The notes below the pieces were generated by a model. It did not search any database, was not told the origin of the DNA, and saw only the letters and a program-made list of their open reading frames with translations. The translations under genes and the position numbers were made by a program. Shown here in pieces: positions 2,311-63,196 of a stretch of 64,000 bases of DNA (position 1 is its first letter; each line of letters starts with the position of its first letter). The stretch spans positions 62,001 through 126,000 of IMG/VR virus record IMGVR_UViG_3300044712_002668; one strand, given 5' to 3'.

Positions 2311-3408
2311 ATGAGCATGGCTTTGTTATTTCTTGACGCTAATGCTCATGTTGCTTTAAACCCTGCTGGATTGAAAGCTTTTAATGATTTTTCAAATTCC
2401 ACATTTGCAAGCCACGGCAATGCCATGGCTGCAAATTATTTGGGACGTGAAGCGGCTAAAGAATTAGAAAAAGCCCGCACAAAAATTGCCGAATTGATTG
2501 GTGCCAAAAGTCACAATCAAATAATATTCACATCTACTTGCACTCAAGCATGTGAATGGGGTTTGGATATCTTAAAAACACGTAATTATAAAAATGTTTT
2601 TGTTTCTCAACTTGAACATCCAGCAATAAGATATCATTTCCGTGATTTGTTTGGACAATCAGAATTGCATGTTACCAAAGATGGTGTTGCAATATGTGAA
2701 CAACCATATCCTGATAGTACTGCGGTTGTTTGTTTGCATGTGCAAAATGAAATAGGTACTATACAACCAATAGAAAATATAAAAGCAGATGTAGTTAGTG
2801 ATATGAGCCAAAGCTTGGCCAAACTTCCAATAAACATGTCTAAACTGTCCAATGTTAAATTGGCTATGTTTGCTGCTCATAAATTTGGCGGCCCTTCTAG
2901 TTTAGGTTTCATGTATATTCAAGATACTGATTGGTGGAAAGAATTTGGCAGCGGTAGTAGATATTATTTTGATAGAGCTGGAAGCCCAGATGTTGTTTCA
3001 GCAATTATGACCGCTGCATCTTTAGAACATGCAATGAAAACCATGCCAGAACGTTATGATCGCATGGTTCGTTTCAGAAACACTCTTGAACCAGAACTAG
3101 AAAATTTAGGATTTAAAATAATAGGAAAGAATACTACAAGATTACCTAATACAACATTTATACAATTAAAAAAGCGTATGGGTCCATATGTTATGTCACA
3201 ACTTGAATCTGAAAACATATATGTTGGATTAGGTTCTGCTTGTGGCTCAATGAATACAGGTTCCAGTCCTGTAATGAATGCATTAGGCTATGGCGGTACA
3301 GCCCATGATTTTCTCCGTATATCTCAATTTGGAGAATATGCTGAAAAAGAAGCTAAAACAGTGGCTGCAGCGATAGCCAAGTACTGTCCAAAATCAGATA
3401 TTCCTTGA
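2311..3408 (+). CDS. iscS: Cysteine desulfurase (IscS/NifS-like, PLP-dependent class V)
   Basis: FLDANA, EHPAI, NEIGTIQP, AHKFGGP (PLP lysine), GSAC (catalytic Cys). Confidence 0.88.
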   Translation: MSMALLFLDANAHVALNPAGLKAFNDFSNSTFASHGNAMAANYLGREAAKELEKARTKIAELIGAKSHNQIIFTSTCTQACEWGLDILKTRNYKNVFVSQLEHPAIRYHFRDLFGQSELHVTKDGVAICEQPYPDSTAVVCLHVQNEIGTIQPIENIKADVVSDMSQSLAKLPINMSKLSNVKLAMFAAHKFGGPSSLGFMYIQDTDWWKEFGSGSRYYFDRAGSPDVVSAIMTAASLEHAMKTMPERYDRMVRFRNTLEPELENLGFKIIGKNTTRLPNTTFIQLKKRMGPYVMSQLESENIYVGLGSACGSMNTGSSPVMNALGYGGTAHDFLRISQFGEYAEKEAKTVAAAIAKYCPKSDIP

Positions 3409-3421
3409 TATATAATCTTTT

Positions 3422-3727
3422 ATGCTTGAAAAGATTTCATGTGAAATTTGTGGAGAGAACAATAAGGCGGTTCTTCATAAACATCATATAGTTGAACGTA
3501 CTAATCCTGATACAACCAATCATGATTATAACCTTGCTGTAATATGTTCAAATTGCCACAATTTAATTCATGACAAGCAGATAAATATTATAGGTTTGTT
3601 TCCATCAACCAAACCTCCATATGGAAGGATTTTGGTTTATGAAAGAGATGGAATATCAAATGTACCAGGATTGACAGAAACTTATTATAAAGCCAAAGCA
3701 CCATCAATGAGGATTTATGAAAAATGA
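3422..3727 (+). CDS. HNH endonuclease
   Basis: CEIC...HKHHI...NLAVICSNCHNLIH zinc/HNH motif. Confidence 0.85.
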   Translation: MLEKISCEICGENNKAVLHKHHIVERTNPDTTNHDYNLAVICSNCHNLIHDKQINIIGLFPSTKPPYGRILVYERDGISNVPGLTETYYKAKAPSMRIYEK

Positions 3728-51221: not shown

Positions 51222-54191
51222 ATGATGACAACACGAAACTCAGTCTCTATTATACAAAATCGTTGGTATGACGGTCAACGCGTTGATCAGCAGGATTTAG
51301 TTACCGATCAAACCAGGAATGTGGGTACAGATGCGGCGATTATAAATAATCACTTTGGCTCAGGTGTTCTACCTAATGCAAGTTTACCTGTAACAGTTTT
51401 CGATACAGATAACCTTCTTCCAGATCAGGTAGCATTGATAGCTTCTGGTGATTTTGACGGTACAGGTTTAGAACCTATTGGTCAACCAAGTGATACCAGC
51501 AATGGTAATCAGTTATCTGTTGAGTTGATGGATTCAGATTTAAACGGACCATCTACTGCATTTGGTAGAATGAGTACAAAGGTACTTATAATAGGTCTTG
51601 ACTTTCAAGGATCTCTTCAGTACGAAAGGTTTTACTTCTATAAGAAAGAAAAACAAGTTTCTCAAAAACATTATGCAAAAGTGTTATGTGTTTTCTTCAA
51701 TGATTTTATAGGTAACACAAACTGTTCAAGGGATTTGGGCGGCAGGGTTGTAATCAAAGAAGCTAACAGTTTTGAGTTGTCCAGGGATCCTGTCATGACA
51801 GCTCAGGATACCCAACCAAACATATTTTTTCGTGATTTCAAGATATCAACATTTTCCGGTGGAACAAATCCTACGGTTACATTGTATCAAGCATTGCAGG
51901 CTGGTATAGGAAACCAATATTCAGTTGATGGTTTAAATATTACCACCACCGCTCTTGAAAACATCTATTTGCCTTCTGGGGATGTAACTACAAAGATAGG
52001 GCAAAAATTTCTAGCTCTAACAAATAACATTCAAAAAATAAGCTTACTTTTAGGTGTTGACCAGGATACCACAACTACTACTGAACATTGGTTTGATTGG
52101 AGTGGAGAGCTTATTGTAAGTGTTTATGCCTTACAAACAACTGTTTCTTCACCAAGCGATCTTGTACCAACTTTAGCTATAGAGTTTGATCCGGCTGCAC
52201 AGCCAATTACTCAGTTCAGTTTGAATCAACAATCATTAAGGGATTTAGGTTATGTACTAAACAATGTTGCTCAACCTATAGATCTTGTTTTTAGTGCTTC
52301 CCCTCTGGGTAGTTCTACAAACTCTGTAATAACGGTTGGTCAATATTATGCGGTTGTTATTAACAGGGCAGGAGATGCAAGTACTGGTAGTATTTTTGCA
52401 GCAGCAGGGGCCACTTCAAACTCTGATACCCGTGTAAGCATCTACTCAGGATTATGGACAGATATACCACAAGAAAGCTTATGGTTTCAGGTATGGACAG
52501 ATGCTGCAAAAGTATCTGATGGACAGGGTTATGATTCTGGTAATGGTATTCAAATACCTAAAACAATACAGAACAGCAGTGGTGCCTATGTTGATTACTC
52601 ATTTGGTTTGAATCAATTTTCTGATACAGGGCATAACACTTTAAATACTGCAATTATAGAAGCTGTCTTGACTCAAAGTCAGCAAGAACAAGATGAAAGA
52701 ACTGGTAGTCCAGTTTATTCTAGACAGCAATATACACCATCACTTAGTTTTGTTACAAACTCAACGCTTCAAACAATCCAAGAAACTGGTAATCCTTTAA
52801 TCATTGGAAGTACAAGGGATACAAACCCTATTAGTAACTATTCTGTAACCGGAACCCAACCATATCCTGGTTTGGTTAAAGGAGATACCTATACCCTTGT
52901 AGCTCCAGATCCATCCGTAATAGCACAAAACCTTATAGGTAGCAAATTGATACCAAATGATGATTGTGCAGGTTTGGATTACCGTATTATGAAAGTGTCA
53001 ATCTGTACCGATGGGTATGGTGATGTAAATGGTGATGGGGTTATTGATGAAGCAGATGCCAATAGAGCTATTGCACTTATTGGCGAATCCCTTTCTTCAG
53101 CATCGACACAACAAAAAATTATTGATGGTTACATATCTACTCTTGAAATATTAAGAGCTGACGTTAATGGTAATGGTATTGTTGATGCTTATGATGCTCA
53201 GTTGATTGCATCATTCATTGCCAGAGATATTTCAACATTCCCATACGGAAGATCCTTTCAGCATGTTGAATTTCAGGTTCAACAGAGTATAGGAAGATAT
53301 GATGGATACTTTGATTGTGATGGGTATATCAGACTAGACGGTTATATTGGGCAGAACAAAATAGACCCTGCAAGTCTTGGTATTTATGCTCAAATTTATG
53401 ATGGGTATATTATACCACCACAAATGGATAAGGCAGATCCTGCTTGGACAACGGTACCATATGTACCTGTACCATTCCTGATTACACCTCAGGCATTCTG
53501 GCAAGATTATCAAGTTCAATTCAGTAGTGCTACAAGAATGGTACCTGCTGTATTTACATCTCAGAGCGGAGGCAGAGTATCAACCTCGACTGTTTGTACA
53601 AGCCCAAGCATAACTAGCTGTAGTAATGTTACTGATATTATAACACAGACAGATCCTGGTAAAAATGATATCTTTATTCCAGATAACTTGATTATAAGAG
53701 GAAACATTTTAAATGTTGATGGTACTTTTTATAAGCAAGATTTTGAGGTAAAGCATTTCGTCTTGGAGCTTCCACCAGAAGTATTCTCACAAGCATCTAT
53801 TGATGTTTTCCATAAATTGGTAGCAGATGCAGGGGATGGTTTTACATCTGCTGGATATCCTGCAATGAGATATAGTGATTGTACCACTGTAGGGTTGGAT
53901 GCTTTGATTTATAACAGACTTCGTTTTGGAGTATCTATTCAATCAATAGTACCCAACCTTGATGGTTATAGTGTCGCTGATGGTTATGGCGTAATTGTTG
54001 ATGACTTGATTGGTATATACATGGATCCTATTTATGGAATTATGACAATTACAGCAAAGGATCTTGACGAGGATTTGACCAAACCAAACTTGATTACAAA
54101 GATCGAGATTGTGGTGTATGCCAAGAAAGCTGGATGGCAAAATACTACTCAAATAATTCCACCAAATCAAATCATGGGACTTGTTACTTGA
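51222..54191 (+). CDS. Baseplate/fibre-attachment protein with a dockerin-like EF-hand pair and 8 DGY motifs
   Basis: N-terminal WYDGQRVDQQDL..DQ; GDVNGDGVIDEADA and ADVNGNGIVDAYDA. Confidence 0.55.
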   Translation: MMTTRNSVSIIQNRWYDGQRVDQQDLVTDQTRNVGTDAAIINNHFGSGVLPNASLPVTVFDTDNLLPDQVALIASGDFDGTGLEPIGQPSDTSNGNQLSVELMDSDLNGPSTAFGRMSTKVLIIGLDFQGSLQYERFYFYKKEKQVSQKHYAKVLCVFFNDFIGNTNCSRDLGGRVVIKEANSFELSRDPVMTAQDTQPNIFFRDFKISTFSGGTNPTVTLYQALQAGIGNQYSVDGLNITTTALENIYLPSGDVTTKIGQKFLALTNNIQKISLLLGVDQDTTTTTEHWFDWSGELIVSVYALQTTVSSPSDLVPTLAIEFDPAAQPITQFSLNQQSLRDLGYVLNNVAQPIDLVFSASPLGSSTNSVITVGQYYAVVINRAGDASTGSIFAAAGATSNSDTRVSIYSGLWTDIPQESLWFQVWTDAAKVSDGQGYDSGNGIQIPKTIQNSSGAYVDYSFGLNQFSDTGHNTLNTAIIEAVLTQSQQEQDERTGSPVYSRQQYTPSLSFVTNSTLQTIQETGNPLIIGSTRDTNPISNYSVTGTQPYPGLVKGDTYTLVAPDPSVIAQNLIGSKLIPNDDCAGLDYRIMKVSICTDGYGDVNGDGVIDEADANRAIALIGESLSSASTQQKIIDGYISTLEILRADVNGNGIVDAYDAQLIASFIARDISTFPYGRSFQHVEFQVQQSIGRYDGYFDCDGYIRLDGYIGQNKIDPASLGIYAQIYDGYIIPPQMDKADPAWTTVPYVPVPFLITPQAFWQDYQVQFSSATRMVPAVFTSQSGGRVSTSTVCTSPSITSCSNVTDIITQTDPGKNDIFIPDNLIIRGNILNVDGTFYKQDFEVKHFVLELPPEVFSQASIDVFHKLVADAGDGFTSAGYPAMRYSDCTTVGLDALIYNRLRFGVSIQSIVPNLDGYSVADGYGVIVDDLIGIYMDPIYGIMTITAKDLDEDLTKPNLITKIEIVVYAKKAGWQNTTQIIPPNQIMGLVT

Positions 54192-54204
54192 TATATGCGA
54201 AAGC

Positions 54205-54261
54205 ATGAGAATCAAGATTCAGCAGTTTTTATTTGGCGCTAATCACAGCTGGATTAGCTGA
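54205..54261 (+). pseudogene. Orphan 5' stub of the glycosyltransferase gene (MRIKIQQFLFGANHSWIS*)
   Basis: First 11 codons encode the same peptide as the GT start at 55024, with synonymous changes. Confidence 0.85.
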
Positions 54262-54274
54262 TATATATTAATAC

Positions 54275-55022
54275 ATGGAAATTACGTGTATTAAATGTAA
54301 CACTAAACTATTGGCTAGTGCTGATAATTTTCAATGGAGAAATGATAGTAAAAAGTGGAGACCAGTATGTAAACCATGTATATCACTTAATGCAAAAAAA
54401 AGATATTCTAAAAATAAAGAAGTGATAAAAACCAAAGCGTCAGAATATCGTAAAAAAAATCGTATTAAAATAATAAACTTCATGAGAGAATATAATTATA
54501 GAGATGAAGTCCAGTTAAGAATGAAACAATATCGTATTGATAATAGAAAAAAATTAAGACAAAAAGAAAAAGCATGGAGACAAAAAAATCCTGAAAAAGC
54601 AAAATTGATTTCTCAAAGAAAAACAAAGAAAAGAAACAAAAACGCTTTGGTTAGAATAAGACAAAATGTAAGTAGAGCTATTGGGTTAGCATTGAAAAGA
54701 AAAGGATCCTCAAAACAAGGAGATTCTATATTTTCATATTTACCTTATTCATTTCAAGATTTAAAAAAAACATATTGAAAAACATTTTGAACCATGGATG
54801 AATTGGGATAATTATGGTGTATACAAAGCAAAAGAGTGGGATGATAATAATCAATTAACGTGGAAATGGCAAATAGATCATATAATACCGCATTCTGAGT
54901 TTTTATATTCATCAATGAAAGATCCTGTTTTTATAAAATGTTGGAGTTTAGATAATTTAAGACCATATTCTGCTAAAAATAATTGTATAGATGGGTGTTT
55001 TAGAAGCAGACATAAAGGATAA
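54275..55022 (+). pseudogene. HNH-type homing endonuclease split by a frameshift
   Basis: CIKC...CKPC Zn finger and basic helix (54275..54778) continue as HIEKHFEPWMNWDNYG...WQIDHIIP...NLRPYSAKNN if one A is removed from the A8 run at 54763-54770. Confidence 0.8.
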
Positions 55023-55023
55023 T

Positions 55024-56151
55024 ATGAGGATAAAAATTCAACAATTTTTGTTTGGACAAGGAGCCCATTCATGGGCGTTGGTTGGTAAAAATATTGGCAG
55101 AGCATTAATTCATCTAGGCCATGAAGTAGATTTTGTTTCTACTGATGGGTTTGAAGATAAATTTTGTCCAAATGATTTAAAACCTTTTGTCAAAAAAGAT
55201 CCTGTAGGAGAGTATGATTGTCAAATCAGTTACACAGCTCCTCACAATTGGCCGAACTATTTATCTTATGGAAAAAAGAATCGTTTTGCTATATGGAACT
55301 ATGAGTATAACAACAAAAAAGTAGATCAAGGTTATACGGCTTTGCTACAAGGATTCGGAAAGTACTACAAAAATACAGATATGGTATTACCTTCTTCTAA
55401 TTTTACAAAAGAAGTTTTTAAAAGTATGATGATTCCAGAAGATAAGATGGTTGTTATTCCTCATGGAATTGATCTGGAACAATTCTCTACAACTAAAAAG
55501 TTTCCTCTAAAAACAAAGAAATCAAAAAAGATTCTTTTGAATATAGCTCAACCTCATAGAAGGAAAGCTATCCCATTAGCTTTAGAAGCTTTCGGAAAAG
55601 CTTTTACTAAAGATGATGATGTTTGTTTAGTAGCTAAAGTTTTTAAACAAAACAATAAAGGACAAGCTTTCGATGTAGATTTTACCGGAATGTACAAAAC
55701 ATTTGAAACCAAATATCCTAAACATGCAGAGGTAGAGTTTGTACATAACTACATAGATAACATAGCTGAAATATATAATTCTTGTGATGTTAATTTTTCT
55801 GCTACATATGCAGAATGTTGGCATCTTCCTTCTTTAGAAGCTTTAGCATGTGGATTAATTAATGTTGTTCCTAGATATGGAGGACAATTAGATTTCTGTG
55901 ATGATTTTAATTCTTTACTTATAGATGGTAATGTAGTTCGTGCTCCACGTGATCATCAATACTGGAAGTTTAATCCTTTTGCTGTTCATTTCCAAATAGA
56001 TACGAATGACGCTGCGCAGAAGTTGCGGTGGGCGGTTCATCCAGAAGAAGGGAAAGTTCTTAAAGAAAAATTCGTGTCGAGCATGTCCGAAACAGCCCAG
56101 AAATTCTCCTGGGAGAATGCTGTCAGAAAGATTCTTGATCTATGCACGTAA
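55024..56151 (+). CDS. Glycosyltransferase family 4 (GT-B)
   Basis: VIPHGID, RKAIPLALEAF, ECWHLPSLEALACG; start at ATG 55024. Confidence 0.88.
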   Translation: MRIKIQQFLFGQGAHSWALVGKNIGRALIHLGHEVDFVSTDGFEDKFCPNDLKPFVKKDPVGEYDCQISYTAPHNWPNYLSYGKKNRFAIWNYEYNNKKVDQGYTALLQGFGKYYKNTDMVLPSSNFTKEVFKSMMIPEDKMVVIPHGIDLEQFSTTKKFPLKTKKSKKILLNIAQPHRRKAIPLALEAFGKAFTKDDDVCLVAKVFKQNNKGQAFDVDFTGMYKTFETKYPKHAEVEFVHNYIDNIAEIYNSCDVNFSATYAECWHLPSLEALACGLINVVPRYGGQLDFCDDFNSLLIDGNVVRAPRDHQYWKFNPFAVHFQIDTNDAAQKLRWAVHPEEGKVLKEKFVSSMSETAQKFSWENAVRKILDLCT

Positions 56152-62418: not shown

Positions 62419-62443
62419 GTACTACCTTGATATATTTGTTGGT

Positions 62444-63196
62444 ATGCAAGAAAAATCATTTGTCATAGTTATAGCTAGTTACAAAAATGCTCCATGGTAT
62501 CGTCAGAATATACAGTCTGTATTGAATCAACGATACTCTAATTATAGGGTAATATATACTGATGATTGTTCTCCTGATAATACTGGTGGATTGATTGAGC
62601 AATTTTTACAACAAAACGATCCTGAAAAGCGTGTAACTTTAATAAAAAATCAGGAACGTAAGGGAGCTATTTACAATTTATATCATATGATTCATTCATG
62701 TAATGACGATGATATTATTATTACTGTTGATGGTGATGATTGGTTGACCAATCCAGATGTTTTATCTACACTAAACCAGGTTTATTCTAACGAAGATGTG
62801 TGGATGACATATGGTCAATATAGATCTTATCCAGATAATAGAATTGGGTGTTCAAGGCAAATTCCACCAGAAGTAGTAAACTCTTCAGGGTACCGTAAGT
62901 ATCATTGGTGCTCTTCACATCTTAGAACTTTTTATGCTTGGCTTTTCAAAAAAATCAAGCAAGAAGATTTCTTTCATAATGGAACATGGATTCCGATGAC
63001 TTGGGATTTGGCTATGATGTTTCCTATGTTAGAGATGGCAGGCACTCGGCATAAGTTTGTTTCCGATGTTTTATATATTTACAATTGTGAAAACCCAATA
63101 AATGATTCTAAGGTAAATTTACAATTACAACAAGGATTGGAGATGTTTTTCAGGTTTCAAAAACCACAATATCCTCGATTGAATAATAGGGAATAA
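62444..63196 (+). CDS. Glycosyltransferase family 2
   Basis: SVLNQ.Y.NYRVIYTDDCSPD, VDGDDWL, SHLRTF; likely start at ATG 62444. Confidence 0.88.
   Translation: MQEKSFVIVIASYKNAPWYRQNIQSVLNQRYSNYRVIYTDDCSPDNTGGLIEQFLQQNDPEKRVTLIKNQERKGAIYNLYHMIHSCNDDDIIITVDGDDWLTNPDVLSTLNQVYSNEDVWMTYGQYRSYPDNRIGCSRQIPPEVVNSSGYRKYHWCSSHLRTFYAWLFKKIKQEDFFHNGTWIPMTWDLAMMFPMLEMAGTRHKFVSDVLYIYNCENPINDSKVNLQLQQGLEMFFRFQKPQYPRLNNRE

What the first reader, a model, noticed from the sequence alone, without database searches (positions are those of the whole stretch)
54189..55074. HNH element flanked by two differently coded copies of the same gene start
Upstream of the HNH gene an unannotated mini-ORF (54205-54261) reads MRIKIQQFLFG-ANHSW-IS*. 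Downstream, the intact GT4 begins MRIKIQQFLFG-QGAHSW. Seven of the first 11 codons differ only synonymously (ATG AGA ATC AAG ATT CAG CAG TTT TTA TTT GGC versus ATG AGG ATA AAA ATT CAA CAA TTT TTG TTT GGA). Inference: the endonuclease invaded the 5' end of the GT gene and brought a replacement, cleavage-resistant N-terminus from another allele, so the host gene survives without splicing. The stub's stop codon is also the TGA of the HNH gene's own TGATATAT motif.
Basis: partly seen in the sequence, partly recalled or inferred. Interest (0 to 1): 0.7.

Follow-up and report, generated by a model that had tools for sequence, protein, structure and literature searches.

The report
Homing nuclease carrying spare gene start
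A selfish HNH nuclease gene sits 16 codons into a jumbo phage's glycosyltransferase gene and keeps that gene working, without splicing, by bringing its own differently spelled copy of the gene's start; two near-identical phages without the insert show the site before invasion.

Summary
Window 54205-54261 is an 18-codon stub. Its first 11 codons encode the same peptide as the start of the intact GT4 gene (ATG 55024) but differ at 7 third positions. Between them lies an HNH gene broken by an A8 frameshift (54763-54770). Contigs of two other metagenome runs carry the uninterrupted allele. In run X5, window 54050-54252 (the whole 16-codon stub type start) continues after 13 other letters into window 55088 onward. 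Run X3 shows a second such allele. So 835 nt (54253-55087) replaced 13 nt: a short leader, a TGATATAT gene-start signal, the HNH gene, new GT codons 1-21, and a short co-converted tract within those. The same layout recurs in uncultured relatives. The HNH always lies directly upstream of the GT. It is preceded by a full stub (3 further loci, one with two nested stubs) or by a G-K-N-H-S-W remnant (4 loci). I read it as intronless homing of a free-standing HNH gene that carries a spare gene start. This mirrors, at the 5' end, the duplicated gene ends around endonuclease ORFs in fungal mitochondria. Cleavage, target immunity and expression are inferred, not shown.

The parts
51222..54191 (+). Upstream 989-aa tail-fibre-like gene with a Dockerin domain. 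Its stop TGA is part of the first TGATATAT.
   Evidence: The same ~1000-aa gene precedes the GT locus in relatives.
54189..54196 (+). TGATATAT gene-start signal of the native GT start, 16 nt before ATG 54205.
   Evidence: It is present and identical in the empty-site contigs of X3 and X5.
54205..54261 (+). Stub: resident GT codons 1-16 (54205-54252), then 2 element codons, then a TGA stop.
   Evidence: The contig piece covering 54050-54252, which includes 54205-54252, differs from the empty allele of run X5 at only 1 of 203 nt.
54253..55087 (+). Foreign segment of 835 nt that replaces 13 nt of the empty allele. It holds the leader, the signal, the HNH gene and new GT codons 1-21.
   Evidence: Joints 54252/55088 in X5 and 54233/55088 in X3; reconstruction.
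54259..54266 (+). TGATATAT signal of the HNH gene, 16 nt before ATG 54275. Its TGA closes the stub.
   Evidence: A like motif stands before the HNH ATG in 5 of 7 related elements, and a degraded one in L110 and L111.
54275..54778 (+). HNH gene, first piece (167 codons): zinc ribbon and tandem helical repeats.
   Evidence: model of the intact homologue.
54763..54770 (+). A8 run. One A too many shifts the HNH frame.
   Evidence: Contigs of runs X1 and X2 show no difference here.
54798..55022 (+). HNH gene, second piece (74 codons from the first ATG). It carries the HNH motif WQIDH...NLRP...N.
   Evidence: family invariants.
55024..56151 (+). Intact GT4 glycosyltransferase. Codons 1-21 (55024-55087) came in with the element and the rest is resident.
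55075..55087 (+). 13-nt co-converted tract just after the new TGG. It differs at 7 of 13 nt from both empty alleles.

Best explanation
This is a free-standing HNH homing endonuclease gene that lives inside the 5' end of the phage's GT4 glycosyltransferase gene and moves by intronless homing. The mobile cassette is about 820 nt. It consists of a 6-nt leader, the phage's TGATATAT gene-start signal, the HNH gene (about 248 codons), and its own copy of GT codons 1-16. It sits directly after codon 16 (TGG) of the GT gene. The proposed course of events is as follows. In a mixed infection the nuclease cuts an uninterrupted GT allele near codons 16-21. The break is repaired from the HNH-bearing genome. 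The left homology arm is the donor's stub, which matches the recipient's GT codons 1-16. The right arm is the GT body. The recipient's own first 16 codons are thereby cut off and become the stub, closed by the TGA of the element's start signal. The gene is given a new head by the element's differently spelled copy, so the glycosyltransferase stays intact without RNA or protein splicing. Because both arms come from the conserved GT gene, the element does not depend on the variable DNA upstream. In this window the nuclease gene has since been broken by an A7-to-A8 slip. Shown: the anatomy, the before and after states, the short co-converted tract, the recurrence at the same nucleotide in diverged phages, and the frameshift. 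Inferred: that the enzyme cuts the empty allele, that neither copy in the invaded genome is cut, and how the three reading frames are expressed.
For: Two independent empty alleles exist in other runs, with flanks 99-100% identical to the window at the junction. In X5 the whole 16-codon stub type start is fused to the GT body. Neither empty allele can be a deletion product of the window's layout, because the 13 nt after TGG differ at 7 positions from the window's new copy. The stub and the new start differ only synonymously (7 of 7; 0 of 200,000 random sets), so both evolved as working GT starts in different genomes. An HNH homologue lies directly upstream of the GT in 9 other distinct loci, and in 6 of 8 readable ones the stop and start overlap or abut. 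Full stubs are found in L005, L036 and L108. L036 has two nested stubs. G-K-N-H-S-W remnants followed by a GATATAT-like signal are found in L009, L109, L110 and L111. Presence is sporadic: 5 of about 65 distinct GT loci. The L108 stub equals the GT start of its HNH-free relative L006 at 30 of 30 nt, on an 80% identical background. The remnant is 73% identical between elements, against 36% at fourfold sites of the adjacent HNH genes. HNH identity stays flat (mostly 0.45-0.62) while GT identity ranges from 0.38 to 0.79. The own genome holds a single copy of this HNH. The upstream neighbours of the GT vary widely while its first 16 codons are conserved.
Against: No enzyme activity, cleavage site or target immunity has been measured. 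The empty alleles rest on short Logan contigs of low depth (271 nt at 3.5; 308 nt at 4.3). The HNH assignment is weak by sequence: Pfam HNH_4 scores 22.0 bits, exactly at the cut-off, in L005, 18.3 in the window, and matches 14 of 59 family members. Fold searches gave no strong match. No donor with the window's new start (QGAHSW) was found. L041 and L077 carry the HNH without a recognisable stub. No RNA run was listed.
Confidence: 0.85

Rival explanations
1. The cassette is a passive passenger. It was moved by ordinary or illegitimate recombination between mosaic phage genomes, and the HNH protein plays no part in its spread. The conserved GT start simply acts as a recombination hot spot.
For: No cleavage data exist. 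The window's copy is frameshifted yet retained in two samples. L041 and L077 lack stubs.
Against: The junction falls at the same nucleotide, after TGG of codon 16, in 8 elements whose HNH proteins are only about 50-60% identical. The exchanged tract is very short and sharp, 13 nt beyond the duplication. Presence is sporadic among close relatives. These are the marks of break-induced homing.
Confidence: 0.09
2. The HNH gene lies in a self-splicing intron. The stub is exon 1 and is spliced to the GT body.
For: HNH genes often reside in phage group I introns. The stub is in frame and ends exactly where the insert begins.
Against: No Rfam intron family reaches E 1 in 53900-55400, and the only intron-type hit (E 5) lies outside the insert. 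Only 13 nt separate the stub's stop from the HNH ATG, and the HNH stop abuts the GT ATG, so there is no room for a ribozyme core. The downstream GT has its own ATG and a full, conserved set of the first 16 codons. No RNA run was listed, so splicing was not tested directly.
Confidence: 0.02
3. The stub is what remains of a second, paralogous GT gene or of a tandem duplication that has nothing to do with the HNH gene.
For: The window holds several glycosyltransferase genes in a row.
Against: HNH-free relatives run straight from fibre, or a small ORF, to one GT. The empty alleles join the stub type start to this same GT body. No GT-like sequence follows the stub.
Confidence: 0.02
4. The layout is an assembly artefact of the metagenome contig.
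For: The record is a metagenome assembly, and the two GT starts are short repeats.
Against: A single contig of run X1 spans the whole stretch. A contig of run X2, from another sample and study, covers 54155-55035 with no difference. The same layout occurs in unrelated assemblies.
Confidence: 0.01

Closest known systems
Intronless homing of free-standing homing endonuclease genes in phages (T4 SegF and other seg and mob genes; Belle et al. 2002, as cited in PMC12724721; ICP1 phage nuclease genes, PMC10448857)
   Same: It is a free-standing nuclease gene in a phage. Presence is sporadic among close relatives. The place next to a conserved gene is fixed. The flanks show short co-conversion. No intron or intein is involved.
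   Different: As I recall them, the known phage cases sit between genes, or split a gene into two working pieces. Here the gene sits inside a coding region and repairs the damage with a spare copy of the cut-off gene start. I found no phage case with a duplicated gene end in 6 literature searches. That search was not exhaustive.
Mobile endonuclease ORFs with a duplicated gene end in fungal mitochondria (Allomyces macrogynus atp6; Glomus atp6, atp9, cox2 and nad3 'gene hybrids', PMC3630166)
   Same: An endonuclease ORF is flanked by two copies of a gene end. The native copy nearly matches that of a close relative lacking the element. The inserted copy is divergent in DNA but nearly the same in protein. 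The working gene uses the foreign copy (PMC3630166).
   Different: Those are organellar, use LAGLIDADG or GIY-YIG enzymes, and duplicate the 3' end (C-terminus). Here the host is a phage, the enzyme is of the HNH type, and the 5' end (N-terminus) with its start codon is duplicated. Translation must therefore start afresh after the nuclease gene.
[quoted passage not shown]
   Same: A mobile insert carries a copy of part of the host gene, and the authors propose that host-gene fragments are exchanged through its gain and loss.
   Different: Those inserts are mitochondrial, mostly annotated as introns, and the duplicated piece matches the following exon. There is no phage, no HNH, and no duplication of the start codon region.
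LAGLIDADG insert with duplicated IscA-like gene end in the related jumbo phage contig L018
   Same: It occurs in the same wider phage group. A nuclease ORF is flanked by two copies of a gene end, about 60 codons here.
   Different: It is the 3' end version, with another nuclease family and another target gene. It was seen once and not studied further.

Membership tests
HNH (beta-beta-alpha-Me) nuclease | Catalytic motif: D-H, then N, then N or H in a short beta-beta-alpha unit | tested here: met
   D201, H202, N227 and N236 are invariant in 59 family members. The window's second piece keeps WQIDH...NLRP...N.
HNH (beta-beta-alpha-Me) nuclease | Match to a curated HNH profile above its cut-off | tested here: inconclusive
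   Pfam HNH_4 scores 22.0 bits, equal to the cut-off of 22, in L005. It scores 18.3 in the window and gives no match in L009. It matches 14 of 59 members at E up to 0.01.
HNH (beta-beta-alpha-Me) nuclease | Fold match to solved HNH nucleases | tested here: inconclusive
   The model has pLDDT 90. The best Foldseek match has E 3.8. Hpy99I matches only the N-terminal zinc ribbon, with Z 4.4.
Free-standing homing endonuclease gene (intronless homing) | Presence and absence at the same site among close relatives | tested here: met
   Empty alleles in runs X3 and X5 have flanks 99-100% identical at the junction. The HNH is present in 5 of about 65 GT loci.
Free-standing homing endonuclease gene (intronless homing) | Fixed insertion point in a conserved target | tested here: met
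   The insert follows TGG of GT codon 16 in the window, L005, L108, L036, L009, L109, L110 and L111.
Free-standing homing endonuclease gene (intronless homing) | Co-conversion of flanking sequence | tested here: met
   The 13 nt after the new TGG differ at 7 positions from both empty alleles. After that, identity resumes, with 0-2 differences in 55-158 nt.
Free-standing homing endonuclease gene (intronless homing) | The enzyme cuts the empty allele but not its own genome | not testable with these tools
   This needs protein and DNA substrates.
Mobile ORF with duplicated gene end (Allomyces and Glomus type gene hybrid) | Native copy like that of a close relative, inserted copy divergent in DNA but not in protein | tested here: met
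   The stub matches the X5 empty allele (1 difference in the 203-nt piece that includes it). The new start differs at 7 synonymous sites in 11 codons.
Mobile ORF with duplicated gene end (Allomyces and Glomus type gene hybrid) | Organellar host and duplication of the 3' end | tested here: not met
   The host is a phage genome and the 5' end is duplicated. It works like this family but is not a member of it.
Group I or group II intron with nuclease ORF | Ribozyme core detectable, and exons that need joining | tested here: not met
   No intron family matches at a meaningful score. The downstream GT is complete with its own ATG.

The most novel reading that the evidence does not exclude
A whole clade of phage HNH homing genes may have evolved a splicing-free way to live inside a conserved gene. 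Under this reading the kept G-K-N-H-S-W remnant serves as a built-in left homology arm, and the spare, differently spelled gene start both repairs the host gene and destroys the target. With both arms taken from the GT gene, the element could hop between jumbo phages whose GT proteins are under 50% identical and whose upstream genes differ. The stub's native start signal, followed by its stop just before the HNH ATG, may also feed ribosomes to the nuclease gene.
Probability: 0.45. Interest if true: 0.72.

Novelty: new variant of a known kind. Interest (0 to 1): 0.6.

Why it matters
Homing endonuclease genes are usually thought to have three ways of avoiding harm to their host: sit between genes, hide in a self-splicing intron, or hide in an intein. 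A fourth way is to carry a spare copy of the gene end that the insertion cuts off. This has been described for the 3' ends of fungal mitochondrial genes. Here it appears in phages, at a 5' end, with an HNH enzyme. The before and after alleles are both caught in nature, and the layout recurs across an uncultured group of jumbo phages. That gives a clean natural system for three questions: how target immunity arises, how short co-conversion tracts swap gene heads between phages, and why short unannotated ORFs that copy a neighbouring gene's start occur next to nuclease genes. It is also a practical warning for annotation. Such stubs mark homing sites and should not be called as genes.

Tried and rejected
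A DNA search of cultured phages with 4 kb around the site found nothing. A protein search with the GT found only a 26% partial hit in a Microcystis phage, so no cultured test system is known.

A pattern search for the window's unusual new start (QGAHSW) in viral contigs gave 0 hits. A protein search with the window's own HNH piece found nothing closer than 60%. The donor therefore remains unknown.

The Rfam scan for introns gave only chance-level hits. No RNA run was listed, so splicing and expression could not be tested directly.

A sequence search of solved structures gave no match. Foldseek and VIA-align searches of the AF2 model were weak.

Five distant HNH homologues at other loci (L013-L017) were tested for a duplicated start of the downstream gene. 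Three could be tested and none scored above shuffled controls. Two had no downstream ORF in the locus. The duplication therefore appears to belong to the GT-linked clade.

A genome-wide scan for gene ends repeated within 1.5 kb found only tandem paralogue arrays besides this case.

A small hairpin at the stub's end (54246-54260) does not look conserved in the other elements when I compare the junctions by eye, so I do not count it as a part.

I considered that the empty alleles arose by deletion between the two repeats. I rejected this because the 13 nt after TGG differ at 7 positions from the window's new copy.
Full report
**What is there.** The window is part of a 336-kb IMG/VR virus record (window = contig positions 62001-126000). 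After a 989-aa fibre-like gene with a Dockerin domain (51222-54191) comes an 18-codon ORF (54205-54261, MRIKIQQFLFGANHSWIS*). Next comes an HNH gene in two frames (54275-54778 and 54798-55022). Then comes an intact GT4 glycosyltransferase gene starting at ATG 55024. The first 11 codons of the stub and of the GT gene give the same peptide but differ at 7 third positions. None of 200,000 random sets of 7 substitutions kept the peptide. The two HNH pieces together cover intact homologues of 243-250 aa. The break is one extra A in a run of eight (54763-54770). Contigs of two runs show no difference there. The genome holds no second copy of this HNH.

**The before state.**
- Run X5 is a freshwater metagenome from a study other than the source. 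It holds a 308-nt contig that equals window 54050-54252 with one difference, then has 13 other letters, then equals window 55088-55142.
- Run X3 is another freshwater study. It holds a 271-nt contig that equals 54153-54233, then has 32 other letters, then equals 55088-55245 with two differences.
- Read in frame, both are uninterrupted GT alleles. X5 reads MRIKIQQFLFGANHSW-SVVGQNIG: the complete 16-codon stub type start fused to the GT body. X3 reads the same with QN for AN and SL for SV.
- The window therefore has 835 nt (54253-55087) where the empty allele has 13.
- The 13 nt after the new TGG differ from both empty alleles at 7 positions. The empty alleles thus cannot have arisen by deletion between the window's two repeats. 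They show the state before invasion, and the 13 nt are a short co-converted tract.

**The same layout elsewhere.** GT relatives at 66-71% identity in viral contigs and 80 metagenome loci show that the first 16 GT codons are very conserved, while the gene upstream varies: fibre, small lipoprotein-like ORFs, or other ORFs.
- An HNH homologue lies directly upstream of the GT in L005, L009, L036, L041 and L077. The same holds in every context fetched for the closest family members: L108, L109, L110, L111 and two without DNA.
- L005 and L108 have full stubs. L036 has a full stub followed by a second partial one, which suggests two rounds of invasion.
- L009, L109, L110 and L111 keep only a G-K-N-H-S-W remnant.
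- In all eight the order is the same: remnant ending in TGG, 6-7 nt, a GATATAT-like signal (degraded in L110 and L111), 6-9 nt, then the HNH ATG. In most, the HNH stop overlaps or abuts the GT ATG.
- L041 and L077 have no recognisable remnant.
- L108 and its HNH-free relative L006 are about 80% identical in DNA, yet the first 30 nt of the L108 stub equal the L006 GT start. This is a second, weaker before-and-after pair.

**Signs of movement.** The HNH is present in 5 of about 65 distinct GT loci found without reference to it. HNH identity between loci stays mostly at 0.45-0.62 while GT identity ranges from 0.38 to 0.79, so the two genes do not share one history. The 18-nt remnant is 73% identical between elements, whereas fourfold sites in the adjacent HNH genes are at 36%. 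The remnant is therefore not drifting freely. Either it is renewed from working GT starts at each transfer, or it is kept because transfer needs it. I favour the view that it is the element's left homology arm. This is an inference.

**The TGATATAT motif.** It is not enriched overall. It does stand 16-17 nt before the ATG of several unrelated genes: a 643-aa protein, a 101-aa HNH, this HNH, a GT2, a ThyX-like gene and an epimerase-like gene (function guesses for the last two are from reading their sequences). It also stands before the native GT start, in the empty alleles too. It is a gene-start signal of this phage. The element carries its own copy, and the TGA of that copy closes the stub.

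**What the protein is.** The family has at least 553 members at E up to 1e-5 in the large protein collection, and nearly all have no precomputed Pfam domain. D-H, N and N are invariant in the C-terminal part. Pfam HNH_4 matches at or below its cut-off. An AlphaFold model of the L005 protein (pLDDT 90) shows three parts: a four-cysteine zinc ribbon, six to seven tandem helices built from a K-x-Y-R-x-x-N repeat, and a small C-terminal beta-beta-alpha part. Fold searches gave only weak matches. The zinc ribbon resembles that of Hpy99I and the repeats resemble the STPR DNA-binding repeat, both at Z 4.4. I call it an HNH-type nuclease with a long repeat domain that may bind DNA. Activity is untested.

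**How it most likely works.** In a mixed infection the nuclease from an invaded genome cuts an uninterrupted GT allele near codons 16-21. Repair copies the cassette, using the donor's stub on the left and the GT body on the right. The recipient's own head becomes the stub, and the gene receives the element's head. Neither copy in the invaded genome then keeps the intact target. The stub is interrupted after TGG. The new copy differs from the empty allele at 7 of the 13 nt after TGG, and in the window it also has one extra codon (QGAHSW). The GT is presumably translated from its new ATG next to the HNH stop. In the window the nuclease has decayed through the A8 slip, which is the usual fate of such genes once fixed. 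Cleavage, immunity and expression are inferences. The anatomy, the two states and the recurrence are shown.

**Comparison with known systems.** It works like intronless homing of free-standing phage nuclease genes (as summarised in PMC12724721 and PMC10448857). It also works like the mobile endonuclease ORFs of fungal mitochondria that bring a foreign gene end and leave the native one behind (Allomyces atp6 and four Glomus genes, PMC3630166; duplicated gene parts in Tremella inserts, PMC7315562). It differs from the first in sitting inside a coding region with a spare gene head. It differs from the second in host, enzyme family and the end of the gene involved. Six literature searches found no phage case, and these were not exhaustive. 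A related contig, L018, holds the 3' end version around a LAGLIDADG ORF. The trick may therefore be more common in these large phages.

**Verdict.** I rate it a new variant of a known kind, with interest 0.6.

Noticed in passing
L018:5077-6527 (IMGVR_UViG_3300028029_000006): An IscA-like gene (Pfam Fe-S_biosyn) is followed by a two-motif LAGLIDADG ORF with one in-frame stop. After that comes a second copy of the last ~60 codons of the IscA-like gene, directly before the GT start. This is the 3' end counterpart of the finding.
   Followed up: partly
L036:1185-1290: Two nested stubs lie before one HNH gene: a full 16-codon GT start, then a partial one (FLFGKNHSWDR). This suggests two successive invasions, or an element lost and then regained.
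   Followed up: partly
window 3406-3724; also 62428-62446: TGATATAT stands 16-17 nt before the ATG of several unrelated genes. Examples are a 101-aa HNH gene (3422-3724, Pfam HNH E 4e-6) and a glycosyltransferase-like gene at 62444 (by its sequence). It is probably a promoter or start signal used by a small subset of genes.
   Followed up: partly
window 55057-55065: The window's GT has one extra codon (G-Q-G-A-H-S-W) compared with all close relatives (G-x-N-H-S-W). It lies just before the insertion point, inside the element-borne head.
   Followed up: no
L005:3255-4001 (model m41dd2d471569): The middle of the nuclease (residues ~34-143) is six to seven tandem helices built from a K-x-Y-R-x-x-N repeat. 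It matches the STPR DNA-binding repeat weakly (5d23, Z 4.4). It may be a modular DNA reader.
   Followed up: partly
own genome outside the window, contig positions ~235-250 kb and ~304-316 kb: There are tandem arrays of small (~80 aa) paralogous genes that start MKVLILNKEDWQ and continue glycine-rich.
   Followed up: no
whole record: The window's own HNH piece is on record on a contig of 454,833 bases. The phage genome is therefore probably larger than the 336-kb record, which is rated 78% complete.
   Followed up: no
L006:3816-4004 and L108:1684-1935: A small ORF (62 and 83 aa, similar C-terminal parts, no family match for the L006 one, the L108 one was not scanned) lies between fibre and GT in one sublineage. 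In L006 it is preceded by the same TGATATATGCGA as the window's native GT start.
   Followed up: no
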